In this document: piece after piece, positions 1 through 64,000 of the stretch
How positions within the stretch are numbered: the stretch's first letter is position 1
How the letters are laid out: every line of letters starts with the position of its first letter
Origin: Diadema antillarum
Taxonomy: Eukaryota
DNA length: 64,000 bases
Assembly: GCF_040938485.1 (NCBI RefSeq)
Contig: NW_027272500.1
Span: forward strand, 186,001-250,000
Direction of reading: 5' to 3'
Translations under genes and position numbers: made by a program
The notes under the pieces: generated by a model
What the model was told of the DNA's origin: nothing
The model's input: only the letters and a program-made list of their open reading frames with translations
The model's database searches: none

Positions 1-2551
1 CTTCGTTTCGATGTTGACGTTATTTTCGTGCGACGTTTAATCTATAACAGAGGCAAAATTTTTCAAATTATGCAAAGTAATACAAGCAAACGTCCAAATT
101 GGTCTTTATTATTGAATGAGAATGCGACCTGTGGGAAACATTTATAAAAAAGTGAGACATAATTACAAAGCGCTGTGAGTTGTGGAGAAAAAAGAAAGAA
201 AGATGGGAAATACGCCAAAAAGGTCCACCTGGGCAAATTTGAATTACTTGGTGAATGTACCCCAAAATCCACTGGTAACCATTTCAGGACAGCATGTCAT
301 AAACATGTCGTAATGTGATTTCACTTTATTTGACAGAATAAGAAAGAAGATTGTTCAGTAATGACAACCATTTTTGTTGGTCGGCAGGGCTCATCGATTT
401 GCAGATGCATTGGATACTAGAAATAATGAAAGAAAAAGAAAGAAAATACAAAAAACCTTGATTGCCCTTCATTGACACACTGTGATCCTTTATTGGCCCT
501 TTATTAAATGCACAGCCCACGATATTTGGGCATTGACTTTCAAATTCCCAACATCTATGTTTTACTCCTTGTATACAAATGTTATGCGATGGATTGAAAT
601 TCATAAATTGAGGGCTAGATGTTTTTACTGAATCTTAGTCCATCCCAATAAAGATAAGAAATACGAGACACGGTATTTTAGAGCATAGCCTTTTTTGTTA
701 TCTCTCTTTTTTCAGAGTGAATCTAAAATGCCTAGAATACATCAATGTATTCTGACATAGCATCTATGATACATTATTTCACTGATGTGTAATATCATTA
801 TATGAATATGAAATAAAGATGACTTTTATAAAAGGTAAATCGGTTTATTATATATACTCTTATATTTATCATATGCATACTTGATAGGTTTCTATTACTT
901 GTTCCAGGTTCTGATATAGAAATTGATTGAATGCAAGAGTGAAAATGTTAAAAAAAGCTAAACACACACACACACACACACACATCATTATGACTGTCAT
1001 CTTCATCATGAATAAAAGATAACAAGTGAACAAAAAGTCTGAAATCTTATACAACTTTTCTTTAGCATGCAGGTCGGATTTTACCATAATTGCCAAACAC
1101 AGCTTTTCTCTTTACCCAAAGACATGCACACGCATCACATTACACATATTATAAAAGAGAGAGAGAGAGAAAGGAGACATCCTACAGGACTAACATTCGG
1201 TTTGGGAATTCAAGAATGACCTCAAAACACACGCCGTTGACGAGAAATCACAGAAAAAGATTTAAGATAAACACAGCTAACACTTAATTATTTGCATAAA
1301 TGACAGCTGCAAATTGAGGAAAGAGTGTAAAAATCTAAGACTGAAGATACATAGGGCACATCTCTTCTGGAAATTTCCCAAATTGTAATTTTCAGCATTT
1401 GGTTTCTGTTTTGTTTTTTGTCTCACGATTTCCAACACAACTACACCATATGACTGCAACTTGCGAGTAGACAGAAATATAAGTGTACAAACAAGATACA
1501 AAAATACAGATTTGCTTATCATTAGTAATGTGCAAGAAGTATGTCATGATACTGCAAACACACACAAACACACCTGCACACACACACAAACACACGTACA
1601 GCACACACACAAATATACACATACACGAACCATTACAAGGCGTTCGTGAATATATAAAAACACATTGATTAAATCAGACGAGAGATAAAATGTATCATTC
1701 TCAATCGTTATCGTAATTCCTCATAACTGGGTAACATACTTTGTAAATGCATACCTTACATCCGTGTCAAACAATTCGTTTCATTAGTTTAATACGAAAC
1801 AAGACTGGAGACATGCTGTGATTAACCAAAATAAAATCTTACTATGTACTAACCTGATTACAACTTGTTCACAAATCAACATTGCAGTGAAATTACAATT
1901 ATACCAATAAGTATTAAGTCAAGGACAGTGCTACCCCCCCTCCCCACACACATTTTGTTTCAGAAGATATTTGGTGTGACCCCCCCCCCCCCCTCCCCCC
2001 GTCATTTTTTTTTTATTCTTGAATATAACGTCTGGCTGTTTTGGTTTGGTTTTTGCTGCTTCTCAGTCGATGTTGGTACACCTTTATTCATTCTTTTGAG
2101 GGAAGTGTGAGCAAAATTTCCCACACCTTCTGAAATCGAATCGAAGTTCTTGTTCTCATAAAGTCGGTTCCTAAAACAAGCAAAAACAAAACAAAAACGT
2201 AGTGCCGCCCCTGTAAACACATTCGACATGGGTCTAAAATATCAGTATTATTAACAGACATTACTCTAAGAGGTCGAAAAAAATAACATTGATATAAGCA
2301 ATACGAAAAAAAGACATTTTGGTACATTTCTGCTTTTTATTCATTTATTGTCCCTTTGTTTTCGTTCAGAAGCATTGAGAAAATATGTAAAACGAGTTGG
2401 AAAACGTGAGTAATCCTACTGTTTCGTGAAGCAAGTGCCAAATTGATAATAAATAATGATGTTAACGGAGAGACTCTTATAAATCGATTATTCTATCTAA
2501 AACATAATCATGGTGCTGATATGTTCATGAAGCTACAAACACAAGGATATA

Positions 2552-3246
2552 TGTGCCCCTGCATCACAAAACATACACAAAGTCGTCAGACATGGATTTT
2601 TAGTTAAAGGGCAGATTCTGAAAGAGCAGACTCTAAGCTTTAAAACGATGTATAACTCAATTCAAATTGACTCTCCTAACCTACCTAAATGCTGGAAAGA
2701 AAGCACACACTCTGGAAAAGTGTGAACTGAGAAAAGAGGCTTTGAAGTACAGGGTCTATTCAAGCGCTTAATCTTTCACCAAGCCACGCTAGCTGTGCAA
2801 TGAAAAGGGCAAAACATAGGATGTCAACCACCAGAGGAACAACAATGAAAGGATTATCAGATTACGCTGAAATTCAGCATATTCTATCAACACATTCTGT
2901 CCATGATTAATGCCCACTTACAAAGCAGTAGCATTATCTTTTCATAAGTTATTAGACTTGAAAGTGAAGAGTGTACAAAGGATTTCAAGAAATGAAAAGG
3001 GGTCTGTAATACATACCTGATCATTCTATACTCTCCCCCCACAAAGGGTTATAGAAAAACTGTTGAAAACACACTTTCCCATTCGTGTTATGATCCCAAA
3101 CTAAAGAATAATGTAGAAGAAAGATACCTCTTTCAGAAAATATGAAAAACTCAAGATTGACATAGTCGACCCATTTCACCTGTTTTGAATCCCCACGATA
3201 ATTCAAGGGGTGCGACTTTTTGTTTGCTTTGTGGTGCACGGTCACA
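2552..3246. mobile_element. About 700-bp non-autonomous DNA transposon (TIR TGTGACCGTGCA.CACAAA, TA TSD)
   Basis: Inverted termini flanked by TA; the empty site in copy B (agatatatgctag near 18962) confirms the TA duplication. Confidence 0.85.
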
Positions 3247-3611
3247 TATGCTAGTTATGATAAAAACCTTATCGATTTCATCGTGAAACTTTCAAAGCAA
3301 GTGGTTATGTTACATATTTATGAAATCTACATTTGCAATATAGTAATCGAAACTTCCTGTCTTACATAATATGAATATCTGTGATTTTGAAATAAGCAGG
3401 ATTAGAATGACAGACAAAATCATGTAGCGTTCAATAAAAGAACATGAAGCAACCTTAAAAAGTATCTCACTATAAAAGAAATAAGAAATAAAAAAGAATG
3501 GTTACAATTCCTGTTTCGATTTAAGAAGCTTAGATTGAAGACCAAAGCTCAGCTTTCTTCAATGGACGCAGCAGAGTAAAAAAAAAAAAGAGTGCATGTA
3601 TTAGAAGGCGT

Positions 3612-3757
3612 TTAATTTTCAGAAGACAGTGGTCGCTCTTTCCTCTTGATTATCACTATCGCACAGGTCAACAACGACAGGAAGAACACAATGACGAGCA
3701 GGACGTACGTGGTCGACAGCCGCTGAAGAACTCCTCGACGGAGACCAGCAATCGGAT
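3612..3757 (-). CDS. Copy A terminal exon: transmembrane helix and short tail
   Basis: ttacag|AT CCG; PIAGLRRGVLQRLSTTYVLLVIVFFLSLLTCAIVIIKRKERPLSSEN*; homologous exons in B and C. Confidence 0.85.
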
Positions 3758-6700
3758 CTGTAAGGCAGGAACAAATATTAAGGGAGTGCAAAAGCATTAA
3801 AAAAAATGAGTATCTGAATATAAGAACGACCCAAGTCCAAGGAAGGCCATTTGGAGTAAACTTAAAAAAAAAAAACTTCATATGAGAGAAGCGATGAGAG
3901 AGGGCGCTATAATATGTGACCGTGCACCTCAAAACGAACATAAAGTCGCACACACTGGTTTTGCGTGAGGACTGAAAACAAGTGAAATGGGTCAACCTAG
4001 CCGAACTTGACTTTTTCATATTTTCTGAAAGAGCAGGTCTTCTTTTACATTATGCTAAAATTTGGTATCGTGAAACGGGCAGGAAAGTGTGTTTTTTAGC
4101 AGTTTATCTCGAACATTTTTGATAGAATAGTGTGATTAGGTGTGTCTTCAGAATCCCTTTTTCATTTCTGAAAAACCTTTTCCACACTCTTCACTTTCAA
4201 CTCTAATGACTTTTGAAAGGATAATGCTACTGCTTTGAAAGTTGACATTAATTATGGACAGAATGTGTTAATGAGGCATGCTTAATTTCAGTTTAATCTG
4301 ATAATCCCTTCATTGTTGTTACTCCAGTGGTTTACTTCCTGTTTTTTGTCCCATTCATCGCACAGCCAGCACGGCTTGGTAAAGATTAAGCGCTTGAATA
4401 CACACTGTACTTCAAAGCCTCTTTTCTCAGCTCACACTTTTTCTGAGATTGTGCTTTCTTTCCAATATTTAGATAGGTTAGGAGAGTCCATTTGATTTGA
4501 GTTATACATCATTTTAAAGCTTAAAGTCTGCTCTTTCAGAATATGGTCTTAACTAAAAAGTCATGTCTGGCGACTTTTTGTTTGTTTTGAGGTGCACTGT
4601 CACATATGAATGTAAGAACGACCCAAGTCCTGGACTTATGTCATTCTTACATTCATATAAGATTTGACTCATTCATTTCAGACACTTCCGGGGGTAATTA
4701 GGATTTATCATTTATACACAAGATGAGTACATGCATAAGCTACAATTTCCTACGTCAAACTGAATTTGGCCAAAAATTGGACTTGGGTCGTTCTTATATT
4801 CAGGTCTTCAATATTGTTACTGTTACGGTGAAATTTCACTCTGAGTCCAGACTGTAACACCAGAGAATTAACTAACATACCAGGGGAAGTATCGTCTTCA
4901 GGAAATAAATGGATGAAGTTTCGTTAAACATTTAATTTTCCACGATGATTAACATTCAATCTACTTGTTATGTAGGGGAAAACAAAAGTTTCAATCGTCT
5001 TTAAAAGCGCGAGCTCTCTCCAATTTGATAAATTATGTTTTGATTTCTACGGGTTTAAATTTGAAAACAGAAACCAAACCGAAGGCAGGTTAAGTAGGTA
5101 ATTATGCTCCTGTTAATAAGAACAGTCTGATTGTTTTTCCTTATATTATTGATGTCCACACTGCACTAGGCATTCCAGGGCGAGTATCTGACTGATTAGC
5201 AAAAATAATTTCTTGATGAATAGGATGTGGGCAGTTGATATGTCCATCTTGGATGTATATGAATGAACCCTACCGAACTTGCATGGAAAGCCGTAGGCCG
5301 AGCCATGAACAACAGAGAGGCTATTCCAGAAAATTGCAGGAAATGGCCGACATTGTTTGTTTGTTGTTTTTTTAGATGGAAGAATGGGATGCTACGAAGT
5401 CGATTTTCCCATTTAATTGCCATGGGTGGAGATAATAATTCTCCGTTGTGTCGCCGTTGTGCCGTTACTGTTTATTGGTCAATACGAAATAGAAAGGTTT
5501 TTGTTTGCTCTGAATGTTAAAACTTGATAGCTTGTCTACTAAAACAGTAAACAGTATCATAAAGTAGCTTAAAATTCGATCTTCTCCTCTGAAATGCATA
5601 TTAAAAAGAGCGGATCCTTTCTGGGGAACCTATCATCACAAAATTTCTGGCTCAATATTTTCCATTACTTAATTGTTTTAAGAGAAACAAACTTACATTG
5701 GACATGTAACGTTCTTAACTGTTCGCTGCTAAGAAGGCTGCACTGAAGGACTCCTCCATGATCAGCCACGGTTGGATCCAAAGTCAACTCGCTTCTAACG
5801 CTGTACGTAGCTACATTGACAGTTCCTTAAAAACAATACAAATGATCAAGAATGATAATAAACTGGTCATTATTTTTAGTACTTCAAAGTTGTTGTAACT
5901 TGATGACCATCGTAGACCACCGCATCCTGTAGACACAGATCGCAATCTCATTGGCCAAGATGTTCACTGGAAAAAAAAAATCTGTAAGAATTGTTGTCTA
6001 ACAGAATCACACCAGTTTTTCAATTATAAAGGAATGTAATCATTGATACTGGATATTGATTTTGTCGTATTTCCGAAGCAGGTTTTCTTGTATAATCCAA
6101 CCTAAAAAAGACAGAATATATACATTGAAAAAAAATTCAAAGTGATTAAAGACGCAATGACAATAAGAACAGATAATACTAAAGTAAACAATGGTAAATG
6201 ACATTACTTTCCTAATGAAATAGTGGGTTGTTTTTTTTTTTTTGGTAAAGTCGGAATAATCATTCTCCTCCACATCCCCACCCAGTAACTTTCCTTTTAT
6301 GTCAACATCCTTGTGCTTTGTAGATTCATTAACATATCAGCACCATGAGTATGTTTTTCAGGTAGAATGATTGCGTTGTAACACTTTCTCTATTTTACTC
6401 AATGCTGCACTTGCTCCAGATAAGTCTGGTTCAATGATAGGCATATGCATGATATACAATACATGTAAAACAACAACAACATAAAAATATCAAACAAACA
6501 AAGAAAAACATGCACAGCTTTAAACCCATCACCTAATATTCACCTACAACACTCCCTCGCAATTACTCTTTCAAATTTCTACAAATACAAGGAGGGATAT
6601 TCTTATCTCGTCACATCTTGACCCTTTCGCTGACACACATATTTTGAAAGAACCGAAATTTAAATGTGAATGTGGACTGAGAAAAAGCAGCAATGCTGGC

Positions 6701-8141
6701 AGACCGCATCATTGAATGTTTGAAGAATATCGGATAATAAAGTGGAAAATTAGACTATACTTATTGTTTATCATGGCAAGCGTTATAATATTGAAAGGTC
6801 ATCATATCACTTTTCTGTTATCCTTGCCTCCTATGCATTATTTCTCCTATCATTCAATTCATTTAAATGCCATGTATATGTTGTAAAATACTCAAGATAA
6901 TTCAAGTTGTTCTATACGCAATTATTGTAATTTTTATACGTTATCATTTGTAAAAAAAAGTATGATTCATAATACACGTTAATTTTACATTGGATGGAAT
7001 ATACTATGTAATATTATTGAATAGGAGGTTGGACTTTAATTGCATACATAATGAGACGTATAACGTATCATAAAAGCATGTAAAACATGAAACACCCCAG
7101 CAAAATCATTCACTATGAAGACTGACATGTAAATACTAGATAATTATTTCAATTCCTCAAAGAATAACGGAAAAGAAGCAATGAACACACTTTTAAAAGG
7201 CAAGGGCTCGTCTAGTCCTATTGGATATTTTTGGAGAAGCGAAAAAAGTTTTATCCTACCTACCAGGGGCGTCACAAGCTTTTTTCAAGGTGATGGTGGG
7301 GGGGGGGGGGTTGCGTTTTGAAAGTAAATGTAACCTGCGATATTTTTTTTTTAGTTGATTTATTGGTTCCTGTATCATCATGTACGCGCACATACACTGT
7401 ACATACATACTATTTATACATACATTGCTGGTAGCAACATATAAGCATAAGTTGCTTTGGAAGTATTTGTCTACATTACCTTTACAATGTACATATATTT
7501 TTGGATGTGAAATTGTGATATCTGGTGCACACTCAATAGAGCATTATTTTAAACATCATACTAAGAGACATTATATTTTGTATTTTGAATTGTCACAGGA
7601 AGTTTACACGTACTTTACGTATGGAATCGACAATTAGCCATGGCTTTAATAGTTAAACGCCCACAGCCACACACACACACACAGCAGCACGCACACGCAC
7701 GCACACACACACACACACAAACACACACACAAACACATACTGGAGAGAGATTTAGGGGAATTTGATTTTTGAACGAACAAATACAACGAACTCTCTAAAA
7801 AAAAAAATCGAGTGAAAATTTTCACTCTTAAAGGATTGAATACAAAAAAGAGTGAATTTAGAGTGAAATTGGAGTGAATTTCGAGTGAAAAATGTTCAAT
7901 TTCACTAATTTCGGATTGACGTCAGGGATCACTCCAAAATCTTCGAGTAGTAAATACTGGCGAATAGATATGACTCATCAGTGCTGCCGGAGCCCCGGAC
8001 TGCGAATTGTTTTTCTGAGACGACCTTTTTGTCCATGTTGCAAAATATCAAGGAAAATAAAAACAAAACCCGGAATGATTATTTTTAGCGTCCGGCGTTG
8101 AGGTCGCTCGCAGACTGAGGTTGTAATAAGTACACTCAGCC

Positions 8142-8213
<72 letters not shown>

Positions 8214-11200
8214 TATGCATATTATTCTGTCTGCCTACGAATTTAACTTCCGTGGACTTGTGGAATAAACTTACTGGTTCCCTCACACCTCACTCCAGCG
8301 TCTTCATAATGACCACAGTTATGGCATCCCCAGTAAGCCCGCCGACATTGCAGCAGAGAATGTTCCGTTCCAGCACAGTTGACTGGGTCAAGCCAGATTG
8401 GTCCCGTTCCCTCTCCAAAGTGGGCGTCAGTATAATAATCTGAGGCCGATGAGTAGCCGAGCTCTCTGCAGACGACGTGCGCGTTGTTAATATCCCAACA
8501 ATCATCACAAACCGTACCCCACTGCCCGTTGCACCTTATCTCAACTCGGCCCTCTCTTCCGCTTGATCCACCAACCAGCCTCACTGTGTTTTATAAGAAA
8601 AATATTGTAGGCCTATAGAATCGACGGAGCATACACATACACAAGTCAATGTAATGTATTGTATTAGTTATGATACATTGTACTATGATATCCCCCAGTT
8701 TGAAATTCAATTACATACAATCTGCATTGAAAAACGGTCGATACATACAAAATAATAAGGCATGTGTCTGTTCAGGTATGTGTATTACAGTGATTGTATG
8801 GTCATATTATTAAACATTCGATGAATAATTGCTGGTGAAATCTTCGGACGATTTGCTGGGTTAAGTTTCTGTTCATCGTTGCTATTATTTTTTTGATAAT
8901 AATAATAATAATGATAATAATAACATCAACAACAATAAATAATAATGATAATGATAATGATAATTTTAATCATTTCTTTTTAGCAAGAATAGAGGACGAA
9001 AAACTTTAATGTTGACGCTGATGCAAGATCAAACATTTCTGTTTCATTTTGCCCTGCATGTTAAGTGTGTGTTTTGGAACGTTGTCATGATATAAATCCG
9101 CGTGTACTCACCCGCATAGCCGGGACACGTTGTTGAGTTAGTGTTACAGTGGCAATAATGTAGTGTGGTCGCTATACTCTCGAACTTGGTCTGCTTTTGT
9201 CAGTAAGTGTTGCTGGTCATCCATTCCAGAAGAAATCATCTTCTCGTAGATTTTTGAATGACGATTTCCTAAGGAATGTTGATAAAGGGGAAAAGTTGAA
9301 ATTTATAACCAACAATAATTTACTAAGAAAGAAGCAACAATGGCTAGTAGCGCCATGTTATTAACATAAAATCATGTAGAAAAGTCTTCTGTCATTTCCG
9401 TCGGTCAGGAATTCAAACCTGTCCGTGAAAAAGAAGTTCTCTTCAGAAGACCTGTTCCAATACTCTTCTCCGAAATAATTCTCATCATTACAAATGACGC
9501 ACTCTTTCTTTTGCCAAGCCTGTCGTAGTAATGCGATACAAAAATTAAATGGAATTAGATGGAATTGGCAGAATAATAAACCGGAAGAGGCGATCAATAG
9601 GACAGTTCTTTTATAAGCTTCCATCGCTAAAACTATCAATATTTGTCAGTTTTATATTCAGCGTCATATCTGCACATAGACGTCATCACAGTGTATAATT
9701 GAGCAAAGACAATTATAACGCGGTCCTCCTAAACCAAGTCGTAGAGAGGACGTTATATCATGAGGCACTTCGCTCTTTCAGCGGGTTCTATCTCGGAGTT
9801 TATGGAGTGTAAAAAAAAAAGTTACTCTAAAACCCTAAACTACACGTCTGCTGCAACGCAGGTAAGATCAATAAGTATTCCAACTCTAGAACTCTATAGA
9901 AGAAGAAAATTCTAACCTTAAAGGGTATTAAAACGCATATTTCTGTGATTACTCGTTATTGCAGGTGAAAGTTCACTTCCGCTTTCAACCTCCAATGCTT
10001 TTCCCTTTGCCGTAAGTGCGACTTGAATCTTTGATCTATGCTCATTTCGACAATGTGAACATTCCTTTCACTTACAGTAACTTACAGATATGTTATACAA
10101 AAAGCATATAATTTGCAAGATTTGGCTATATTATTTTGTAGTATTTCCAATTCTTTAACGGTCACTTTTTGCAACCTCAAGATTACAAGTCTCGGCTTGT
10201 ACAAGAATGTTTTATCTAACCTTTATAAGAAATGGGCAGAAACTGAATACCTCACAACACCAATGACGGCTATTTGATTCAATGTTTGTGTAGTCTAACA
10301 AGTTAAGGTACCGCGTCATAAACTTTTTTACATTCAAGGCATCTCATCATAGGCTAGTTTGCATTTATATATTTCTTTTAATATTTTTGGGGTCAGTCTA
10401 TAAATCACACAATGTAGAGGGTCCGTTATGAAAGCCTCATAACCTGCCTAATGTCTCTCTTGGAAGTATTTCCACCATTCCTTAAAAGAAGCAGATTTAT
10501 CATGATTCTGAAATGAGAATTGTGAAATAGGCTGCAAGGTTATGATGAGTGATTCTTTAAGTCCAGGTTGCCTTATAAACCCATCGGGGAGAGCGTTTGT
10601 GAAGATTAGAAATTGGTCCGTTTTGTTTCCCTCTCCTGATGTCGGTGAAAGTTCATATCCGATCAACCTGCGCATTGAGTTCGTCAAAAAGTATGGATTT
10701 CCTCATTGTCATTGTGGGCGTGAATGGAGAGGTGATTTTTTTGATGTATTACAGTAATTATTTCTAATCTATAAGGTATAATATTATCATGAGAGTACGG
10801 TAAGGTTTCAAAAGTTATCCTCATACTTTTTCTTGTAGAAGGGGTTATTATGTTATGTTTTTCTCATGCTCGTGTCTCCCCTATAAATAACCGAGTATTA
10901 GAGTGTCCGCTGAGAGTCTGTAAAGTTTCTTCCCTTTTACTCTTCTCGGCTGTCATATATTGAAGCTGAATCTTACACTTAATTTGAGCTAAAATGTGTC
11001 AAATCTTCGTCTCCAGCTCATGTGTATGGGTAAGAAAAGTATCTGTCCTTTTCTAGAAATCATTGATAAGTGAAATACACGCACTATTTGTGGAATAAAT
11101 GTGCGGATAATAATCGAGGGTGTCGCACTAGGTGAAAGGTTACTTCCGTCTGGGTTAGGAGATTCATTTTCTGAGGCGTTCCCTATATGCGCCTTGAATT

Positions 11201-11415
11201 TTCATATTATAATTTACATTAAAATAAAAAAGTATATTTCTGTATATGTCGAAATGTCTATATAATACAGTTGAATAAAAAAGGCAGAAACCCCCCCAGA
11301 TTATTTGACATTCGTTTCTCTAATTTGTAGAATGCATCACGTGCCTCCGTCATCCTTTCGCACTGAATGATGGACTTCAGCATTATTCAGCAGTTGAGAT
11401 ATATAAATATATACT

Positions 11416-11453
<38 letters not shown>

Positions 11454-14400
11454 GCGTGTGCGAGTGTATGTGTGTGTGTGTCTGTAACTTTATCATGCTA
11501 TAACAAGGAACACATCAATCCAACTCTTACATTTACGTCTACTTAATTCTGATGTAACATTGCACCCAGATGTGATTACACAGAAGCAAGGAGCAGAAAT
11601 TTTCATCAAAACTGAGGCCTAAAAGTCTTGATTGTCAAGCTCGTTCGAAAAGTCTGCTTTCAGGAATTGCGCCATCAAATTTGTCAAGAGGGCATCTTAT
11701 TGTTCTTAAAATGACAAATTTCAAAGACCCTTGCCTCCAAAGTCATAATTTTATCTAGCGCATTCGGGTTGTACTTCATTTTCCACAAAGATTTCGTTGG
11801 TGGTGGTGAAGCCGACTGTCATGAAGCCGTCTGTAATTTGGCCGCCATTCAAAAACCATGTTGGTACAGCCGAGTCTGAGACATTATTTCCTGTGCAAAC
11901 CGCGGTGACTTCACGGCCATCTCGGAGATTCGAGGGTATCTCGAGGTTCAACGTCATTCCAGCTGCAAAGGAAATGTAGGAAGATTGACTGATAGATCCC
12001 AATAGAATCAATCTTGATAAAATCAAAAGAAATGTCTTCTACGCCTCAACAATGCATCCGTTATTCACAGTCTCAAATATTGCACAGGGTAACAACATGA
12101 TTAGTATTAGGCTTTCCCTTGTATCATGTATGGATATATGGATACATGGAATAGATTGATGGAATCAACAATGCAATTGACGTAATAATGTGATATACAT
12201 CAAAATGTTCAAACTAAATGAAACGGTAAGATAATTATGTTCATGAGTTTGAGGACCTTAATGCCCACTGTTGAATTTCCACTGAACGTTATGATTTCAA
12301 AGTTGCAGCAGATCTTTACGCTGTGCTGATTCAGACTTTTTAATGAAACACATATCGAAACGACGAAAAGTGCACAGTGATGAAGGTGAAGAAATAAACC
12401 AAGTCTTAAATGATTTTCTCTTACCAATGAGGTGAATGTTTATGAAAAGAAGCCCGACCTGCACCAATACTCTGTTGTCAATCATTGTGAGCATATTCCT
12501 GTAGATATTAAAATCCTGGTGGATAAAATGGGGGAAAAATCAATCAATTGATCGATCGATCAATCAATCAATCAATGGTATCACGAATGGACATGAGAGA
12601 GGCGATAAAAGACCTATAAAACCCAAAGTAGTTATTTTCGATTTACAAGGTTTTACGATTAGTTGAGTAATACGCTTGATATGATAGAATAAAAATTGAT
12701 ATTTCGAAGAGAAACACAATCTGCATTTTTTGATTGATTTCCTCACACTTACTCGCGAGTATCTTTCAAAAATATGAGGAGAAGTTGAAAAATAAGTTTT
12801 GAAATTCGCCAATCTCCAGAAATAAACTGTTCTGCCTCGTTTACCATGAAGCTAGTATCAAATCAGGGTCGGTACCATGCGTGCATTTAAAATGTCTGGC
12901 TTTTATTGAGTCACTAGTACGATACGTGCATATGAAAGAGGCATCTCACATGACAGAATCCACAAGATTAGTCCGCGTATTGTGATGTGTCATTCAGTTT
13001 CCTGCTTCCCAAGCAGCCACGATTTTGTCTTTTGTTTTTGATGACGCCTCGTTCTTACATTTTACCCAAGATGAATGTTAATTTCATGATCTCTTCATTT
13101 TACAATTGAATGGTGAAATCTTTTTGATTTAGATTTCAAGTCCTTGTCTGCATCACGATGCGATTATATGTCGAATTTTTACTATGAGGCATTACATGGA
13201 ACATTTTGAGTATTTCAATATATCATTGCTTTTGGCAAATTCGAACAATTCCTTTGCATTGAATGGAATGAAGTTTGTTTTCTGCATGTAGTTCGGAAAA
13301 AAAGTCATGCCATTTGTTTGTTTGTTTGTTTGTTTGTTTGTTTTCTGCGTAATCGGCGTTTCAAGTGTTTTGGTTGTTGTAACTGCAAATTGAAAAGTAT
13401 AGGGTTGAAAAACACCGATCAATGTTTCCACTAAAATGAGATGTGGGGACAGAAACGTGAAAATGTATCTATATCATATATATGTGACCGTGCATCACAA
13501 AATGAACAAAAAGTCGCACGCACTGATTTTGTGTGAGGACTAAAAATAGGTGAACAGGGTCAATTTGGTCAATTTTGACTTTTTTTATATTTTCCTGAAA
13601 GAGCAAGTCTTCTTCTACATTATGCTAAAATTTGGTATCATGAAATGGACAGGAAAGTGTGTCTTTGGGTAGTTTATCTCGAACTCTTTTTCTCTCGCCA
13701 TGTTTTTTGTTAGTCATATTAATATCACAGAAACATTCAAGTTATGCTGAGGCGAGAGGAAGGTGCATTCAAATATCTTTTGTTAAACATTTCAGTACTT
13801 TAGCAATGATTGACAGATGAGGTCATCTGAAGAATATTGGTTTGATTTTTTTTTTTTTGTGTGTGGGCGTTCCCAAGTAATCTGAAGAAAAATTGGGGAA
13901 AAAATCGTTAAGAATATGGAATGTTTCTTGATATTCATTTCACCGCTAAAGTGATGTTGAGGGTATCATAAATCAATTCAAATCAACACGCATTTGGATT
14001 TCAGGGCCCCTTTAAGGACATTTCAAATCGATGATATCCTTTGATAAGAATAGGGCCTATGTTTATCTATAAAGAAATGCTTTTTTTAACACGAGCCGTT
14101 TTATTTAGTTCAGTATGGCAGATGAAAGAAAAGTAATAGAGAAAATGACATAAACGAATTCGATTCAAATGTGGTTTAGTAGGGTAATGTCAAAGGGACA
14201 TTAATGCCTTCATTGTGAAAATGGACGAGATTTGTCATGGTGGGAAACCAGACACTGCCTGTCAGTCATAGATCATGTAGCTTCTTAAATCCTACACTAT
14301 TTCTTCCTGTCTATTGACATGATGCTTTATCGTTGTTCCGTCTCATGTATCACTGCTCTTGTTTTCACTGCTCGTCATATTACCGGTTTTTGTTGACTTT

Positions 14401-15667: not shown

Positions 15668-15803
15668 NNNNNNNNNNNNNNNNNNNNNNNNNNNNNNNNN
15701 NNNNNNNNNNNNNNNNNNNNNNNNNNNNNNNNNNNNNNNNNNNNNNNNNNNNNNNNNNNNNNNNNNNNNNNNNNNNNNNNNNNNNNNNNNNNNNNNNNNN
15801 NNN
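15668..15803. other. Assembly gap (136 N)
   Basis: Run of N; the equivalent site in copy C (about 63740-63940) is a (TA)n/(CA)n microsatellite patch. Confidence 0.99.
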
Positions 15804-16963: not shown

Positions 16964-17006
<43 letters not shown>

Positions 17007-17152: not shown

Positions 17153-17190
<38 letters not shown>

Positions 17191-18083: not shown

Positions 18084-18756
18084 TGTGACCGTGCATCACA
18101 AAACCAACAAAAAATTGCACTCTTGATTTTACGTGGGGACTCATAAAAAAGGTGAAACAGGTCGACCAAGTCTTTTTTAGTTTTCCATATTTTCTGAAAG
18201 AACTATTCTTCTTCGACTTTATTTGTGAGGTTAGAATCATAAAATCAATGGAAAAGTTGGTTTTCGACAGTTTTTATGACCCCTTTTTGATAGAGTTGTG
18301 AGATCAGGTACATCTTACAGGCACCTTTTCATTTCTTGAAAAATCTTTCGCACATTCTCCGCTTTCAACTCTGATGAACTTTTGAAAAGATAATGCTGCT
18401 GCTTTGAAAGTAAAGTTGGCGTTAATCATGGACAGAACGTGTTAGAAGAGCATGCTCAATCCCTCATCGTTGGTGCTACGGTGATGTACATTATGTTTTT
18501 TTTTATCCCACACATCACACACCTAGCAAGGTTTGGTAAAGATTAAGCGCTTGAATACACCCTGTACTTCAGAGCCTCTTTTCTTGATTCACACTTTTCC
18601 AAAAAGTGTGCTTTCTTTCCAATAATTAGATAGGTTAGGAAAGTCCATTTGAATTGAGTTATACATTAAAGCTTAGAGCCTGCTCTTTCAGAATCCACCC
18701 TCAACTAAGAATTAATGTCTGGCTATTTTTTGTTGGTTTTGTGGTGCAGTGTCACA
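18084..18756. mobile_element. TGTGAC-TIR MITE (older copy, TSD not intact)
   Basis: tgtgaccgtgcatcacaaaaccaac...gttggttttgtggtgcagtgtcaca; body homologous to the other copies. Confidence 0.8.
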
Positions 18757-19338: not shown

Positions 19339-19475
19339 TCAAGAGAGACTTATCTCTCTCCTCTTCACGATCACTGTCGCACAGGTCAACAACGACAGGA
19401 AGAACACGGCGACAAGCAGGGCGTACGTGGTCGACGGCTGCTGAAGAACTCCTCGACGAAGACCAGCAATTGGAC
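19339..19475 (-). CDS. Copy B TM/tail exon
   Basis: ttacag|GT CCA; PIAGLRRGVLQQPSTTYALLVAVFFLSLLTCATVIVKRREISLS*. Confidence 0.85.
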
Positions 19476-28400: not shown

Positions 28401-28607
28401 AGGGAAGCTGTAGATTATTATTGTTATTATCATTATTATCTTATTGTGTAACAGGTGCGAAATGTAGGGGATAATGATAGGAGGGACATAAGCGTTTTGA
28501 AGAGTTTTGAAGAAAATATAGACTGAAGACTATCTAATTAAGATACGATGGGATACACATTTCACTACATTTAATTTCATTACATTTAATGTATATATAA
28601 ATGTATA

Positions 28608-28658
<51 letters not shown>

Positions 28659-41251: not shown

Positions 41252-41388
41252 TCAAAAGACAGTGGCCTCTCTTCTCTTGACTATTACTGTCGCACAGGTC
41301 AACAACGACAGGAAGAACACGGCGACGAGCAGGGCGTACATGGTCGACGATTGTTGGAGAAATCCTCGACGAAGACCAGCAATTGGAC
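41252..41388 (-). CDS. Copy C TM/tail exon
   Basis: ctacag|GT CCA; PIAGLRRGFLQQSSTMYALLVAVFFLSLLTCATVIVKRREATVF*. Confidence 0.85.
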
Positions 41389-47300: not shown

Positions 47301-50300
47301 TATATGAAGAGCTCAGTTGCAAAAGGTACTACTTCCATTTTCCATCAAAATCCACTTTTTGGTCTTGATGTACTCATTTTAAGGACCTCTTTACACCTAT
47401 AATAACGAAAAGCTGAATTTCCAACCAGAAAGTGTTAAAAAATTACATTCAAAAATCAGTTCGGTTGCAAAAGGTACTACATCCATTTTAGTTCGGTTGC
47501 AAAAGGTACTACATCCACTCCAATGACATCATCGGGAAATTGACCAATCAGAGTGCAGCATTGGCTTGACCCTCTCCCATTGTGTACTGACTTAATCTGT
47601 AAACAAAAGAGGTTGGCTTCTGGCTTTCTGGCTTTCCGTTAAAATCACCACGCAAATCTGACCAATATCTTGAAAAACTCACTACATTTTTATCAAGCAA
47701 TGTAGGAAAATGAAGGAGAACTCATTGACAAAACAAACCATCCCAGGAGAAGGATCGTGAATTAAAAGCAGTCGACAAGAGCAAAGGGAAAACTGGAGAA
47801 ATTACGAGACTCTCATGTAGTCCCACATACTGCATCTACTGTTAGTTACCGGTACCGTGCGTTACTGCTAGCAGTGTGTTGAGTTTGAGCCATTAATTGT
47901 CCCCAGAGTAAAGTACAGACACTTTGTAGGTATGGTCTATTTCTTACATAAATAGCTTAACAGCTAATAAGTGTTTGACAACTAGTCTGAAAGCAAAGTT
48001 ACTTTGTTAGATGTATACAGCGGCATGAAATTCTGACATCCTACCAACAGTGCTTTACCTGTGGGTATGCTGTGATATTCTATACGTGCATGATGTCAAG
48101 TACCAGGCCTCAGGGCTTGAAAGTACATTGTGATATACAGCTTTGAACACTAGATTTATATTCATTCTTGTAAATGACACCTTTTGCTTATACAATGTCA
48201 CAAAGGTAATACCAAATGTGCGTTTAATATAGGTGGTCATATTACTCATCGACGGTCTTGATAAGCTATTAGATTATCAAATTTATCTTACCTGATAAAG
48301 AAAATACAACAATGAAATTCATGTAATGAATTTAATTACACCGTTGAGAAAATACAGCACATTCAGATGCTGCTTTTCCACCTTTCCCTTAGAAGTTACA
48401 TTGCAAAAAAAAAAAACGAAGAAAAGATAATAAATACAGTATTCTTGAGACACGTGAAGGGACAATTCACAGAGAGAAAAATAGCCAAAAATTTAATTCA
48501 AAGAGGAAAAAGATAAGAAATCTTGAGGTAAAGCTCGTGAGAGAAAAACAAAAGGAAATGGAAGAGAGAAATCACCTGGTGAGATATTGTGACCCCTCCC
48601 CGTCTATAACTGGTCACGCATAATGGATCCCCCCCCCCCATGCTTATGACCAATGACAGTCATTCATTCAAAACATTAGTCAGCAAGGGAGAAGTAGGGC
48701 ATTAGCGATGCACATTGGTTTGTTATTCTTGATGCTAAATAGGGCAGGGCATTGTCAATTACCTAGGCCCCCTTGACCTCGTATCCCATCCCCATCAACA
48801 CCATTGCTGATAAATAAATCCGCGAAACACGTCATAACATCACACCAGATATATCTCAGGCATGTGAAATTTCGGTTTCAAAAGGTACTACATCCACTTT
48901 CGGTTGCAAAAGAAACTACATCCACAAAAATATAAAAATGTTTAATTCATAAAAAATAAATGAATGGACCTGGATTTTCTCAGAGAGTGGTTTTAGTGTT
49001 GTATCACCTAGCAGTATAATAGGGGGAAATAGCATGCCAGTCTGAGCTTGCTAAATATGATAATTAAAAAATCTCGTTTTTCTCAGAACTTGAAATTATG
49101 GATGTAGTACCTTTTGAAACCGAACTCTTCATATGTGCATCCTTTGCAAAATTTTGATGAGATTATGGTTTGTAAAGTGAATGCATTGGGCATGTACTAC
49201 AATTAAACCTGAGGTTGGATTTTGATTGAATATGACATTGATGATATTATGCTTTATAGAAAAAAAAAAAAACATTTACAACATGCAAACACCGTCAGGA
49301 AAGTCATTTACTATGAAGAATGACATGTAATATAGATATTTGAATCCCCTAAAAAGGAAAACAAAGGCACTTTCAATAGGCAAAACCCCCGACCAGTCCT
49401 CAAGAACATAGTTGAGAAAAATACGTTTTGATCCTATGTACCTTGACAAGAGTAGCATGGGGTGCTTTTCTGTCTGCCTACGAATCGATAAGTTCCGTAG
49501 ATTAGTGGAATAAACTTACTGTCTCCCTCACACCTCACTCCAGCGTCTTCATTATGTTCACAATTTTCACATCCCCAGTACGCACGGCGACATTGCAGCA
49601 GAGATTGTTCCGTTCCATCACATCTGATTGGGTCAAGCCAGATAGGTCCAGATCCCTCCCCGAAATGGGCTTCAGTATAATGAGCAGAGGCTGATGGGTA
49701 GCCGAGCTCTCTGCACACCACGTGCGCTTCGTTGATACTCCAACAATCGTCACAAACCGTGCCCCACTGCCCGTTACACCTTATCTCAACTCGGCCCTCC
49801 CTTTCGCTTGATTCACCTACAAGCCTCACTGCAATTTTTGAGAAAAGAATATATCGATTCGTCTTACCACGACCAAAAAGTAAAATACAAACAACCAACC
49901 AATCAACCAACCAACCAACCAAACAAACAAGTAAAAAAAAAAAAAAAAACACGCATTCGGAAGTCAATATGATGTATTATTCTACTACTTATCGGCAGGG
50001 TTGAAATTCTTTTACACAATGTCTGTATTCAAAAATTAGAGATGCAGTCAATACGCACAAAAGAATAACGCATGTGTGATCTGATATGTGTATTCTTGTG
50101 CTTGTATGATCGAATAATTAACCACTATCAACCTACAAGCAATGCTTCTATGTAGATTCCTCATATTTCATGTTCAATTGTCTTAAATGCTGTATTTGTC
50201 AATTCATCCATGTATTTTCTTTTGTTATGTTTATGGTTTATTTGTTGAAATGTGGAATATGGAGCAATAAAAAAATGAAAACAAACTAGATGGATGCTTG

Positions 50301-52824
50301 CTGGTGAAGTCTTCCGAAAAATTGCTCAGTTTAATTCATTTAGTCATTTCACAAGAGAGGAAGACAACAAAATGTAAAGATCTAAGAAATCTAATGTGGA
50401 CGCAATGTGTGACATCAAAACTTTCATTTTTTCAAACAAATCATTTTTTTTTTCTTTTACCCGGATGTTAACTGTGTGTTTTGGAACGTTGTCAACATGA
50501 TTATCAAGCTGCATGTACTCACCCGCAAAGCCGGGACACGTACTTGAGCCAGTGTTACAGTCGCAATTATATAGTGTGGCCGCTGTACTCTTGGACTTGG
50601 TCTGTCTTTGTCAGTCAGTATTGCCTTGCATCCATATCGCAAGGCACCATCTTCTTGTCGAGTTTTTAATGATGATTTCCTGAAGAATGTGGATAAAAGG
50701 AATAAGTTGGGACTTATCCTTATCACTGATTCACTAAGACAGAAGCACCAATGATTAATACCAGACATATAATTAACATGAAATCGGTGGAAAAAAGGAC
50801 TGCCATTTCCGTCCATCAGGAATTCAAACCTGTCTGGAAATATCAGCTGCTTGTCAGCAAACCTGTCATAATACTTTTCCTAGAGCCAGTCATTATCACC
50901 AATACTGATACTCTTTTTATTTTGAAACGCTTATTTAGAACGGAGTGAGACAAAGGATCAAACATGAAACATCTCCTACATCGAAGTGGCAGAAAATAAA
51001 CATGAAAACACAATTTATTAATGTCAGTTGTTTTATGAACTTACATCGCTAACACAGTCAACGTCTGCAAGTTTCATATTCAGTGTGATTTATATACAAG
51101 GAAGACATCAAACTGTATAATTGAGCAAAAACAATCATAATGCGGTCCTTTTACCTCTGTTGTAGTGGGGACTTTATGCCATGACACACATCACTCTACC
51201 AGCACGTTCTATGTCGGAGGATGACAAAGTTACTCGTGAACCCCAAACTACACACCTGATGGACTTATATCACCTCAGGTAAGATGAACAAGTATTCAAA
51301 CACTAGACGCCTATTGTAAATGGACACAATTCTTACCCTGCAGGGTGTTAAAACGCCTGTTTCTGTGATTAGTCGTGATTGTAGGTGAAAGTTCACTTCC
51401 GTTTTCAACTCCAATGCTTTTCCCTTTTGCGGTCCCTGTGACAAATATCTTTAACGCTATATTCATTTCGACAATGGAAACATCAATTACGCTTGAAATC
51501 GGTTACCTATATTCTACACACTTGGTATGGCATCGATGCCATTGCTGACTTGAGTCTTTCAAGTGACCCGGATTCAGCAGGGATTTTTTGTGACCTCAAA
51601 AATACGAGTCTGGACTAGTACAAGAATGTTAATTGTAATCTTTATAAGCAATAGGCAGAAAATGCATGTCTCCCAACATTAACGACAACCTTTTGATTTA
51701 GCTTTTTGTTAGTTTTACAAGTAAAGTTACGACTTCCTAGACTAGTCTACACTCCAGAAAGTTCCGGCATAGGTTTCTGTGCATTTCTTGATCTCTTTGA
51801 ATATTTTTCCGGTCAGTCTATAACCGTAGAGGGTCCGTTATAAAAACCTCATAACCTGCCTATGTCGCTCTTGAAAATATTTAACACCATGCCTTAAAAG
51901 CAGCAGATTTATTATGTTTTTGAATATGACAATGGAAAAATAGGCTGTAAAGTTAAGTACAGTGATTCTTTAGGGACAGGTTGCCGTATGAGCCCACTGA
52001 AGAAAATATTTCTGAAGATTAAGAATCAGATCGTTTTGTTTCGCTCTCTTGATATCGGTCAAAGTTCATATCCGATCAACCTGCGCATTGAGTTCATCTG
52101 AGAACATGGGTAACTTCGTCATCACTGTAGGCGTGAACTGGAAGATGAGTTTTCTAACATATTTCACTAATCATTCCTAATCTGTAAGTAATATCATTAT
52201 TATGAGGGTACAGCAGGGTTTCATTCATGTTCCTGTATGTTTTCTTCCGAAATTGTGTTTATAAGTAGTTTTTCTTTTATTTTCATATTCTCCCTACATC
52301 TACACACAAATTAGAGTGTCCGTTGAGAGTCTGTAAACTTTCTTCCCTTTCTCTCTTCTCGGCTCTATTGTATGGAAGACGAAAATTACACTCATTCTCT
52401 CCTAAAATTTGTCAAATCTTTGCCTTCTACAGCTGTGTGTGGGTAGAAGATGTATTTCTTTGTCTTTTAGAATCATGTTGCGTGTAATGAATGCATTGCC
52501 TTCGGAATAGATGTGAGCGTACCCATCGAGGGTATCGCACTAGGTGAAAGGTGACTTCCGTCGGAGTTAGCAGATTCACTTTTTTTTTTAAGCGTCCTCT
52601 CTCTTTGCCCTCGATGTAGATATTGAAATTTAATTGAAAAAAAAATTCTGTTGAAATTAGAGTGAGACTAAATCTCTAGAATACGATAGTAAATAAAGGG
52701 CAGAAAAAAAAACATCAGTTTAATTGTTATTTGTCTCTATATTTCGTAGAATGCATCACATCTCTCCCTCATCTAAGCGCATTGTCTATAACGCCATGTC
52801 ATTATTCATTAATGGACATATATA

Positions 52825-52866
<42 letters not shown>

Positions 52867-53950
52867 GTGTGTGTGTGTGTGTGTGTATGTTTGATTTTTT
52901 TTTTTCGTGCTATAACACGGAACAAATCCAATCCAGCTCTTGCATCACGTCTACTTAATTCTGATATACCCCTGTGCCAAGATGTGACCACACGGAAGCA
53001 AGGAGCAGAAATTCGCAACGAAAATTAAGCCTAAAAGTCTTGATTTTCACGCTCTTTCGAAAATTCTGTTCGAATAAACTACGACATCAACTTGGTCCAG
53101 ACAGCGTCTTAGAGTTCTAAAAATAACAGATTTCAAAGATCCTCGCCTAAAAAGTCATCATTCTATCTAGTGCCGCATGTAGGTTGTACTGTATTTTCCA
53201 CAAAGACGTCGCTAGTGGTGGTGAAGCCGTCTGAGATATTGACGCCATTCAAAGACCATGTCGGTACAGCCGAGCCTGAGACATCATTTCCAGTGCAAAT
53301 CGCGGTGACTTCACGGCCAGCCCGTAGAGGCGAGGGTACCTCGAGGTTCAACGTCATTCCAGCTGAAAAGGAAATGTAGGAAGATCGACTGTTAGATCTC
53401 AATAAAGTCGAACATAACAAAATGGGAAGAAATGTCTTTTATGGGAGAAATGTCTTCTGTGTTTGCTTGAACAATATATCCATCATTCACAATCACATAT
53501 ATTACACAGGAAAAAGATGATATAGCGTTTTTCCTGATATGATATAACGGATAAATGAAATTGATATTTTAGATGAATAATGCAATTGATGCGATGGTAT
53601 GATATACATCAAAATGATCAAACTAAATGAAACAGTAAGATAATTATTTTCATGAGTTTGAGGACTTTCATTCCCACTTTTGAATTTCCACTGAAAGTTT
53701 CAGCAGGTCTTTTTTTCAGGTCTTTTCATCCTGTTGATTCAGACTTTTAGGATGTACACAGAAATACGTATCAAAATGAACACAAGCGTAAAATGTTGAT
53801 GAAAAAAAAAATAAACGAAGTCTTAAAGGATTGCTTACCACCGAGGTGAATGTATATGAAAAGAAGCCCGAACAGCACCAATACTCGGTTGTCAATCATT
53901 GTGAGAAGATTCCTGTATGATTTGAAAATATTAAAATAAATACATAGATA

Positions 53951-54001
<51 letters not shown>

Positions 54002-63539: not shown

Positions 63540-63747
63540 CTGCGATCCAATACTCATGTGCATCAAAATTACAGAATTCTTTCATACTGAGAAGCTGTTT
63601 TTAATTAAAAACATTTTGGAAATCGGAGTCCAGTCTCGAAACTCGCGAACATAAGTTTTGGGAAAATTTCCTGTACATTTACTATTCGATAAAACTAGTC
63701 TAACACAATCACGTCAATAGCAACCAACAATATTATTCATATCATTT

Positions 63748-63785
<38 letters not shown>

Positions 63786-63789
<4 letters not shown>

Positions 63790-63861
63790 GAACTTGCTAC
63801 CAAAAGGCGCTAAATCCATTGAAAATGATGGATTTAGCGCCTTTTGGAAGCAAGCTCTTCA
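63786..63861. mobile_element. About 75-bp palindromic mini-MITE in a (TA)n tract
   Basis: TGAAGAACTTGC...GCAAGCTCTTCA hairpin. Confidence 0.75.
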
Positions 63862-63862
63862 C

Positions 63863-63907
<45 letters not shown>

Positions 63908-64000
63908 CATTTATACATATATATATATATATATATATCTGAGTTGCCTGCCTCTTTTTCAAGAAGTTTTGCCTAATTGAAATATTCCTTATGATTCTTT

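What the first reader, a model, noticed from the sequence alone, without database searches (positions are those of the whole stretch)
1..64000. Tandem array of diversifying SRCR/Ig chimeric surface receptors
Seen: three head-to-tail paralogs with the architecture SP, split Ig, SRCR, variable Ig-like stalk, TM, tiny tail, with further copies implied at both window ends. Established: SRCR genes are massively expanded in echinoderms, and clustered Ig-type receptors that vary in domain number are typical of immune and allorecognition loci. Inference: this is a lineage-specific immune or self/non-self receptor family. I do not recognise the architecture as a named family.
Basis: partly seen in the sequence, partly recalled or inferred. 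Interest (0 to 1): 0.85.

Follow-up and report, generated by a model that had tools for sequence, protein, structure and literature searches.

The report
Diadema SRCR-in-Ig surface receptor array
Three neighbouring genes of the sea urchin Diadema antillarum encode membrane proteins in which a scavenger-receptor (SRCR) domain sits between the two halves of an antibody-like domain, above a stalk of 0 to 4 repeats; the family was found only in Diadema and its function is untested.

Summary
The window (Diadema antillarum) carries three head-to-tail paralogs on the minus strand, about 21 kb apart. All three have open spliced reading frames: A 303 aa, B 674 aa, C 584 aa.

B and C each hold one extra stalk exon with an in-frame stop.

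The N gap is intergenic, and its flanks are collinear with the B/C spacer.

The stalk unit is an orphan sequence family with a confident Ig/FN3-like predicted fold. In 1.84 billion representative proteins it matched strongly only Diadema antillarum and D. setosum proteins.

The two Ig halves match consecutive parts of immunoglobulin constant domains, which supports an SRCR nested in one Ig domain. The structure prediction of this head failed.

"Diversifying" is supported for stalk-domain number only: dN/dS is 0.2-0.4 for every exon type. Immune or allorecognition function is plausible but untested; I found no expression or polymorphism data.

I rate it a new variant of SRCR/IgSF receptors, undescribed in the searched literature and mostly truncated in public gene models. 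The scan had noted the nested SRCR and the weak Ig-exon donor before, on this same window.

The parts
3612..12485 (-). Gene A, CDS span, 303 aa. Exons: leader 12425-12485, Ig N-half 11775-11962, mini exon 9112-9190, SRCR 8275-8583, Ig C-half 5697-5825, TM/tail 3612-3757. No stalk exons.
   Evidence: Spliced model is open, with all junctions GT-AG and phases consistent. SRCR Pfam E 6e-33. No stalk-like tblastn hit between 3757 and 5697.
19339..34815 (-). Gene B, CDS span, 674 aa. Exons: leader 34755-34815, Ig N-half 33884-34056, mini 30151-30223, SRCR 29447-29755, Ig C-half 27785-27913, stalk S1 24753-25034, S2 23048-23335, S3 20722-21000, S4 20047-20340, TM/tail 19339-19475.
   Evidence: Open spliced model. 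The public model P0002 (100% identical, Diadema antillarum) covers SRCR to TM but omits the Ig N-half, the mini exon and S4, and starts at an ATG inside an intron at 33473.
21638..21925 (-). Stalk pseudo-exon S2' of gene B. It arose by a 1.41-kb tandem duplication of S2 (93% identical), keeps its splice sites, and has one in-frame TAA.
41252..53899 (-). Gene C, CDS span, 584 aa. Exons: leader 53839-53899, Ig N-half 53190-53362, mini 50523-50601, SRCR 49520-49828, Ig C-half 45788-45916, stalk S2 44130-44417, S3 43195-43473, S4 41862-42161, TM/tail 41252-41388.
   Evidence: Open spliced model. SRCR Pfam E 2e-32.
44758..45039 (-). Stalk pseudo-exon S1 of gene C. It is 282 nt, homologous to B's S1, keeps its splice sites, and has one in-frame TAA with no frameshift.
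15668..15803 (.). Assembly gap in the A/B intergenic spacer. It is not part of any exon.
   Evidence: Flanks are collinear with the B/C spacer at matching spacing.

Best explanation
These are three functional members of a multigene family of type I membrane glycoproteins found so far only in Diadema. Each protein has three parts.

1. A composite head. An Ig-like domain is encoded as two half-exons, and a short Cys-rich linker plus a single SRCR domain are spliced in between strands D and E.
2. A stalk of 0 to 4 tandem 7-strand Ig/FN3-like modules in these three genes (0 to 6 across the family). Each module has four invariant cysteines.
3. A conserved juxtamembrane and TM segment, with a cytoplasmic tail of only 8-11 residues and no recognisable signalling motif.

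Shown: the gene structure, the domain content, the tandem and exon-level duplication and loss, and purifying selection.

Inferred:
- The head (SRCR plus Ig) binds ligand and the stalk sets its height above the membrane.
- Signalling or uptake needs an associated partner recruited through the conserved TM region.
- The most likely role is recognition of microbial or other non-self surfaces by immune cells, as for other expanded echinoid SRCR genes.

The family grows and varies by tandem gene duplication, by duplication, loss or skipping of symmetrical phase-1 stalk exons, and by exchange between paralogs. Evident positive selection on sequence plays no visible part.
For: - Gene models: all three are open, with consistent phases.
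- Conserved layout: the exon order IgN, SRCR, IgC, S(0-6), TM recurs in all 14 genes examined in the window and loci L001-L006 of two species; the mini exon was found downstream of 13 of the 14 IgN exons. The phase-0 donor GTACAA occurs in 12 of 14, and the other two still have GT at that position.
- Independent support for the splice pattern: RefSeq model P0032 uses exactly this donor and mini exon. Models P0148 and P0146, from a subfamily about 40% identical, also read IgN-SRCR-IgC.
- SRCR: Pfam E about 1e-32.
- Ig halves: the Ig N-half profile hits 437 PDB chains, nearly all immunoglobulin light chains. The best E is 4.7e-5, aligned to C-lambda residues 123-169, strands A-D. The Ig C-half profile hits C-kappa residues 172-197, strands E-F, at E 0.12.
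- SRCR-less relative: locus L007 has the IgN and IgC exons 2.2 kb apart with no SRCR exon.
- Stalk: AlphaFold pLDDT 89 with 7 strands. VIA-align Z is 10.4 to gp130 FN3 domains and about 9 to Fc-gamma-receptor domain 2.
- Selection: dN/dS is 0.22-0.37 in all exon types, and exons are more conserved than introns.
- Exchange between paralogs: A and C are closest in the 5' exons, B and C in the 3' exons, and dS is lower for the stalk and TM exons.
- Language-model neighbours are chordate SRCR+Ig proteins, score 0.91-0.92.
Against: - There is no evidence of transcription, of the expressing cell type, of a ligand or of polymorphism.
- Most RefSeq models omit the Ig N-half, and some omit SRCR and the Ig C-half, so the 5' exons may be weakly or alternatively used.
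- The Ig N-half donor (GTACAA) is weak.
- AlphaFold failed on the head (pLDDT 44), so the nested fold is not demonstrated.
- No Pfam Ig model hits any non-SRCR part.
- The Ig C-half match to PDB is only marginal (E 0.12).
- Nothing ties the family to immunity beyond analogy.
Confidence: 0.6

Rival explanations
1. Gamete-recognition or sperm-peptide receptor family. On this reading the proteins work like the sea-urchin speract receptor, an SRCR transmembrane protein with a very short tail that acts through an associated guanylyl cyclase. Genus restriction would then reflect fast-evolving reproductive proteins.
For: The layout is an SRCR ectodomain, a single TM and an 8-11-residue tail. Restriction to one genus fits reproductive proteins as well as immune ones. 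The speract-receptor architecture is from my own knowledge, not checked here.
Against: The speract receptor has four SRCR repeats and no Ig-like modules, whereas these proteins have one SRCR. Dozens of paralogs in several arrays, with variable stalk length, is unusual for a peptide receptor. No dN/dS above 1 is seen. No expression data exist either way.
Confidence: 0.12
2. Non-immune adhesion or developmental IgSF-type surface proteins, acting in cell-cell or cell-matrix contact, with the SRCR serving as a protein-interaction module.
For: The stalk's best structural matches are adhesion and cytokine-receptor FN3/C2 modules. Purifying selection is uniform across domains. The tail has no signalling motif.
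Against: Core adhesion molecules are usually conserved across echinoids, while this family was found only in Diadema. Gene-to-gene differences in stalk exon number, together with the pseudo-exons, point to rapid birth-and-death evolution.
Confidence: 0.15
3. Allorecognition (self/non-self) locus comparable to Hydractinia Alr or Botryllus FuHC and fester.
For: The genes are clustered IgSF-like genes with atypical Ig-like domains that sequence models miss and with variable domain number. Hydractinia Alr genes show the same features (my own knowledge).
Against: Diadema is solitary. No polymorphism data are available. dN/dS among paralogs is low. Paralogs predate the split of D. antillarum and D. 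setosum without obvious allelic-lineage behaviour.
Confidence: 0.05
4. Decaying, unexpressed or artefactual array: pseudogenes, or uncollapsed haplotypes misjoined in tandem.
For: Two stalk exons carry stops. Early D. antillarum assemblies were inflated by retained haplotypes (PMC13511894). Public gene models are truncated.
Against: Reading frames of 6, 10 and 9 exons are open, with dN/dS well below 1. The copies differ by dS 0.17-0.9 and in exon number, far beyond allelic divergence. The chromosome-level D. setosum assembly has the same head-to-tail arrays.
Confidence: 0.05

Closest known systems
Echinoid SRCR multigene family (S. purpuratus SpSRCR and DMBT1-like genes; survey in PMC10855680)
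   Same: The SRCR domain is encoded by a single phase 1-1 exon. The genes lie in tandem clusters: 70% of S. purpuratus SRCR genes are clustered. Exon gain and loss occurs among sibling paralogs.
   Different: Described urchin SRCR genes mostly carry many SRCR repeats, or SRCR with EGF, Sushi, F5/8C, WSC or CUB domains. These proteins have one SRCR, embedded between two Ig half-exons and followed by an orphan Ig/FN3-like stalk. The non-SRCR parts have no homolog outside Diadema.
Chordate SRCR+Ig proteins (ESM Atlas clusters with PF00530 plus PF00047/PF13895, 400-650 aa)
   Same: They are the nearest clusters by language-model features, at score 0.90-0.92 with 194-197 of 256 shared features. They combine SRCR and Ig-type domains in proteins of similar size.
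   Different: Their Ig domains are recognised by Pfam, while those here are not. I saw no evidence that their SRCR is nested inside an Ig domain. No sequence homology was detected beyond the SRCR.
Sea-urchin speract receptor (sperm SRCR membrane protein)
   Same: SRCR ectodomain, single TM and a very short cytoplasmic tail, implying signalling through a partner (my own knowledge).
   Different: It has four SRCR repeats, no Ig-like modules, and is not known as a large tandem family. This comparison was not tested here.
Hydractinia Alr family (IgSF genes with Ig-like domains detectable mainly by structure prediction)
   Same: Clustered genes for type I membrane proteins with tandem Ig-like domains that profile libraries miss but AlphaFold folds confidently, and with variable domain number (my own knowledge; compare).
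   Different: Alr proteins have no SRCR, the cnidarian is colonial, and an allorecognition role has been demonstrated there. No homology was detected.

Membership tests
SRCR superfamily (Pfam PF00530) | Match to the SRCR profile above Pfam's gathering score | tested here: met
   110-114 bits against a cutoff of 26.1, covering profile positions 1-100 in A and B and 2-100 in C.
SRCR superfamily, group A versus group B | Group B: 8 Cys including the C1-C4 pair, encoded by a single exon. Group A: 6 Cys, usually two exons (my own knowledge). | tested here: inconclusive
   The domain is a single exon, as in group B. It lacks the C1 and C4 positions (LGYS instead of LGCG, and no Cys before GRVE). It has 9 Cys, including non-canonical ones at positions 17 and 28 or 82.
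Immunoglobulin superfamily (head domain, IgN + IgC) | Sequence-profile match to Ig domains | tested here: inconclusive
   No Pfam Ig family matched, at E up to 1 for the exon ORFs or at E up to 0.01 for whole family proteins. Against PDB, the IgN profile matched Ig light chains at E 4.7e-5, with 437 hits. The IgC profile matched only at E 0.12.
Immunoglobulin superfamily (head domain, IgN + IgC) | B-strand Cys, C-strand Trp, and the E-F 'L..D.G...C' motif at Ig-like spacing | tested here: met
   IgN has VTAVC followed by 13 residues and then W. IgC has LTLTPTVADHGGVLQC. With the insert removed the Cys-Cys distance is about 63 residues (sequence).
Immunoglobulin superfamily (head domain, IgN + IgC) | The two halves fold into one beta sandwich | tested here: inconclusive
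   The AlphaFold model of P0032 residues 20-252 reached only pLDDT 44 and pTM 0.34.
Ig-like / FN3-like fold (stalk module) | Seven-strand s-type beta sandwich | tested here: met
   pLDDT 89 with 7 strands. Z 10.4 to gp130 FN3 and about 9 to the Fc-gamma-receptor C2 domain. Foldseek TM 0.5-0.7 to FN3 and to CD2/SLAM-family domain 2.
Ig or FN3 Pfam families (stalk module) | Sequence-profile match | tested here: not met
   No Pfam hit and no PDB sequence hit below E 0.29. Only bacterial Ig-like repeat proteins and one Ig_3 repeat protein matched the profile, at E 3e-10 to 3e-4.
Allorecognition loci (Alr, FuHC type) | Extreme allelic polymorphism that predicts fusion or rejection | not testable with these tools
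   Only one haplotype per species was available. Paralog dN/dS is 0.22-0.37.
Echinoid immune-response gene families | Expression in coelomocytes and induction on challenge | not testable with these tools
   No transcript-derived member turned up: every cluster member I listed and every family hit came from NCBI genome annotation or UniRef.

The most novel reading that the evidence does not exclude
A complete SRCR domain, with a small disulfide-bonded linker, is inserted into the D-E hairpin of an Ig domain whose halves resemble C1-type constant domains. This would create a single composite recognition head, a domain-in-domain architecture that I found no description of for either superfamily. 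It would have arisen by shuffling a phase 1-1 SRCR exon into the intron of a two-exon Ig domain, and an SRCR-less relative (L007) still keeps that intron. The head is carried on a genus-specific, previously unrecognised Ig/FN3-like stalk domain family.
Probability: 0.5. Interest if true: 0.75.

Novelty: new variant of a known kind. Interest (0 to 1): 0.6.

Why it matters
Diadema antillarum is a keystone reef grazer that has twice been almost wiped out by disease, and its immune gene repertoire is essentially uncharacterised.

This family has dozens of genes in several tandem arrays. It is specific to the genus as far as public data show. It is annotated only as 'uncharacterized protein', and most models lack the 5' exons. 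Corrected models give a concrete candidate receptor set for expression, association and population studies.

Structurally, an SRCR nested in an Ig domain would be a rare natural case of domain insertion into the Ig fold. It would also be a clean example of exon shuffling into a split-domain intron. The stalk unit adds one more Ig-like family that sequence libraries miss.

Tried and rejected
1. I first read the Ig N-half exon as ending at a phase-1 site after the conserved VQPxC (T|GT or T|GC donors). I rejected this once the mini exon, with a phase-0 acceptor and a phase-1 donor, was found in all copies and RefSeq model P0032 proved to use the GTACAA donor.

2. AlphaFold on the head module (alignment A3, 19 rows but only 4 rows deep in IgN) gave pLDDT 44 and is unusable. 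Adding exon fragments to deepen the alignment made MAFFT misalign SRCR onto IgN (alignments A2 and A4), so those alignments were discarded.

3. A local HMM of concatenated IgN+IgC against the multi-Ig protein P0025 and 2000 shuffles scored no better than the shuffles and was uninformative.

4. Pfam on all non-SRCR exons gave nothing.

5. The stalk profile against PDB sequences gave nothing.

6. Four literature searches for this architecture or family found no description.

7. I considered and rejected uncollapsed-haplotype misassembly as the source of the three copies. Divergence and exon content differ too much, and D. setosum has the same arrays.

8. I could not extend the locus beyond the window. 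The genome collection open to scanning holds only bacteria and archaea, and no other annotated protein from this 360-kb contig surfaced.
Full report
**Organism and layout.** The window is from the sea urchin Diadema antillarum. RefSeq protein P0002 ('uncharacterized protein [Diadema antillarum]', on a 360-kb contig) is 100% identical to exons of the middle gene. GC content is 31-41%. All coding evidence is on the minus strand.

Direct-repeat analysis finds three-copy families for the SRCR, Ig and TM exons and for an upstream segment, at 20-22 kb spacing. The three long SRCR ORFs score E 6e-33, 9e-32 and 2e-32 against Pfam PF00530.

**The gap.** N 15668-15803 lies between gene A's upstream region and gene B's downstream region. 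The left flank 15366-15562 matches 37055-37248 of the paralogous B/C spacer, and the right flank 15836-16323 matches 37505-37991. Order and strand are the same, and the distance between matches is 274 nt versus 257 nt. The flanks are therefore collinear, no exon or reading frame crosses the gap, and nothing below depends on it. I did not try to fill it.

**Gene models.** Alignment of the three copies around each conserved ORF gave the splice sites.
- The leader exon (MIDNRVLVQVGLLFINIHLI in A) ends in a phase-1 GTAAG donor.
- The SRCR, Ig C-half, stalk and TM exons all have phase-1 acceptors. All but the terminal TM exon also have phase-1 donors.
- The Ig N-half exon has no usable phase-1 donor, only a conserved phase-0 GTACAA.

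The last point was resolved by RefSeq paralog P0032, a full-length model from another contig. Its residues 79-103 map to a small exon that is present in all three window genes: 9112-9190, 30151-30223 and 50523-50601. In A this exon encodes TKFESIATTLHYCHCNTNSTTCPGYA. It has a phase-0 acceptor and a strong phase-1 donor, G|GTGAGT.

In its own locus (L001), P0032 uses exactly the GTACAA donor. Across 14 Ig N-half exons in the window and six loci of two species, the donor is GTACAA in 12 and GTGCAA or GTAGAG in the other two. The mini exon lies 2.65-3.7 kb downstream in 13 of the 14.

With these junctions the three genes splice into open frames:

| Gene | Length | Coding exons | Stalk exons |
|---|---|---|---|
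| A | 303 aa | 6 | 0 |
| B | 674 aa | 10 | 4 |
| C | 584 aa | 9 | 3 |

B has an additional S2 copy (21638-21925), made by a 1.41-kb tandem duplication, with one TAA. C's S1 (44758-45039) also has one TAA. Both pseudo-exons keep their splice sites and are 1-1 symmetrical, so they must be skipped to give a full-length protein.

The public model of gene B starts at an ATG inside an intron (33473) and omits the Ig N-half, the mini exon and S4. Several D. setosum models likewise start downstream of exons that are present in the DNA.

**What the parts are.** The SRCR is a single-exon domain with 9 Cys. It lacks the group-B C1 and C4 positions.

The stalk unit is 91-96 aa with four invariant Cys and a VTCSGTNGIG-type F strand. 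It has no Pfam match and no PDB sequence match. It nevertheless folds with pLDDT 89 into a seven-strand sandwich. The best structural matches are FN3 domains of gp130 (Z 10.4) and C2-type domains of Fc-gamma receptors, CD2, 2B4 and CD48 (Z about 9, TM up to 0.71). 'Ig-like stalk' is thus right at the fold level; the choice between C2 and FN3 stays open.

The two short head exons carry complementary Ig hallmarks. The N-half has the B-strand Cys and, 13 residues later, the C-strand Trp. The C-half has LTLTPTVADHGGVLQC.
- A profile of 12 N-halves hits 437 PDB chains, almost all immunoglobulin light chains. The best E is 4.7e-5, and the longest alignment is to C-lambda residues 123-169, strands A to D.
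- A profile of 16 C-halves hits rabbit C-kappa residues 172-197, strands E-F, plus Siglec, NCR3LG1 and VCAM Ig domains, but only at E 0.12 or worse.

The two halves therefore match consecutive segments of one domain type, and the mini exon and SRCR lie between strands D and E.

Two further observations fit this reading. A subfamily about 40% identical is annotated by RefSeq as IgN-SRCR-IgC in both species (P0148 and P0146). A third subfamily (P0009 locus, L007) has the IgN and IgC exons 2.2 kb apart with no SRCR exon anywhere in 27 kb. In L007, joining the two halves in frame requires the homologous phase-0 donor, and the RefSeq model does not include the C-half exon.

The direct test failed. 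AlphaFold on the head reached only pLDDT 44.

**Family and distribution.** A profile of the stalk domain against 1.84e9 representative proteins gave 20 hits below 1e-10 (the weakest 4e-27). Every one I looked up is an 'uncharacterized protein' of D. antillarum or D. setosum. The five remaining hits (E 3e-10 to 3e-4) include bacterial Ig-like repeat proteins and one Ig_3 repeat protein. A word-based search with the long Ig C-half also returned only Diadema proteins. Other echinoid proteomes are in these databases, since their DMBT1-like SRCR proteins appear.

In D. setosum, family genes sit in head-to-tail arrays at 42.5 Mb and at 44.73-44.91 Mb of chromosome OZ188188.1, with 4 or 6 stalk exons per gene in the loci read. 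A second D. antillarum locus (L001) is also tandem, and its gene has 3 stalk exons.

In a tree of the SRCR-IgC region, the window genes fall in a well-supported clade with D. setosum members, unresolved inside. The paralogs are thus about as old as the species split and lack clean one-to-one orthology.

Language-model neighbours of P0032 are chordate SRCR+Ig proteins. The domain combination is therefore not unique, although the nesting may be.

**Selection.** Exons are 75-90% identical between copies, against 42-75% for introns. Within the window, pairwise dN/dS runs from 0.12 to 0.88, highest for the Ig N-half of A versus C on small counts. Pooled over 6-13 paralogs per exon type, dN/dS is 0.22-0.37 for every exon, with almost no pair above 1.

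Relationships are mosaic. A and C are closest from the leader to SRCR, while B and C are closest from the Ig C-half onward. dS is about half as large in the S2-TM exons as in the head exons, which suggests exchange between paralogs.

So 'diversifying' holds for stalk-domain number and not for sequence at this resolution.

**Function.** Nothing here tests function. The architecture is a type I membrane protein with an N-terminal recognition head, a stalk of variable length, a TM and juxtamembrane segment conserved even in distant subfamilies, and a tail too short to signal alone.

I favour a non-self or microbial recognition receptor that works with a partner, by analogy with other expanded echinoid SRCR genes. 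The rivals are a gamete or peptide receptor like the speract receptor, a non-immune adhesion role, allorecognition, and a decaying array. These are weighed in the Rival explanations section.

I found no paper on this family or on an SRCR inserted in an Ig domain.

**Verdict.** This is a real, intact tandem array of an undescribed receptor family known so far only from Diadema. It has an unusual and probably nested head and an orphan Ig-like stalk domain. I rate it a new variant of known SRCR/IgSF receptors, of moderate to high interest. The immune role and the nested fold are still to be shown.

Noticed in passing
window 57023-57097 (+): A tRNA-Thr(AGT) gene (Rfam 42.7 bits; also called by ARAGORN). 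It sits inside a roughly 6.9-kb insertion (about 54378-61282) that gene C's upstream region has relative to gene A's.
   Followed up: partly
window 40443-40900: Two copies, 99% identical, of a 231-nt tandem unit downstream of gene C.
   Followed up: no
window 2531-3017 (+), 4107-4672 (-), 13435-13741, 18307-18822 (-), 42353-43106 (+): An interspersed repeat, probably a transposable element, present in both orientations. Copies lie in gene A's IgC-TM intron, where the stalk exons are missing, in gene C's S3-S4 intron, and downstream of genes A and B. It could have mediated the loss of A's stalk exons.
   Followed up: no
window 33473 (minus strand) and the whole of gene B: RefSeq model P0002 for gene B begins at an intronic ATG (MAVQHDRLF) and omits the Ig N-half, the mini exon and stalk S4. 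Several D. setosum models (P0001, P0037, P0039, P0028) also start downstream of head exons that exist in the DNA.
   Followed up: partly
window 12486-12510, 34816-34840, 53900-53925 (minus strand, just upstream of each ATG): A conserved 'ATACAG|GAAT' lies about 17 nt before each start codon and looks like a splice acceptor. This suggests a non-coding first exon further upstream, perhaps in the conserved block 14269-14453 / 36244-36428 / 62666-62850.
   Followed up: no
L007:10213-10428 and L007:12665-12781 (D. setosum OZ188197.1): A stalk-rich subfamily (P0009, P0004, P0003) has IgN and IgC exons adjacent, with no SRCR exon in the locus. The ORF just upstream of its IgC exon is Cys-rich (YYCCDYCTDRCYHYK), reminiscent of the mini exon.
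   Followed up: partly
window 22155-22669: An inverted repeat (22155-22397 versus 22565-22669, 85% at the protein-translation level) in the intron between stalk exon S2 and its duplicated pseudo-exon.
   Followed up: no
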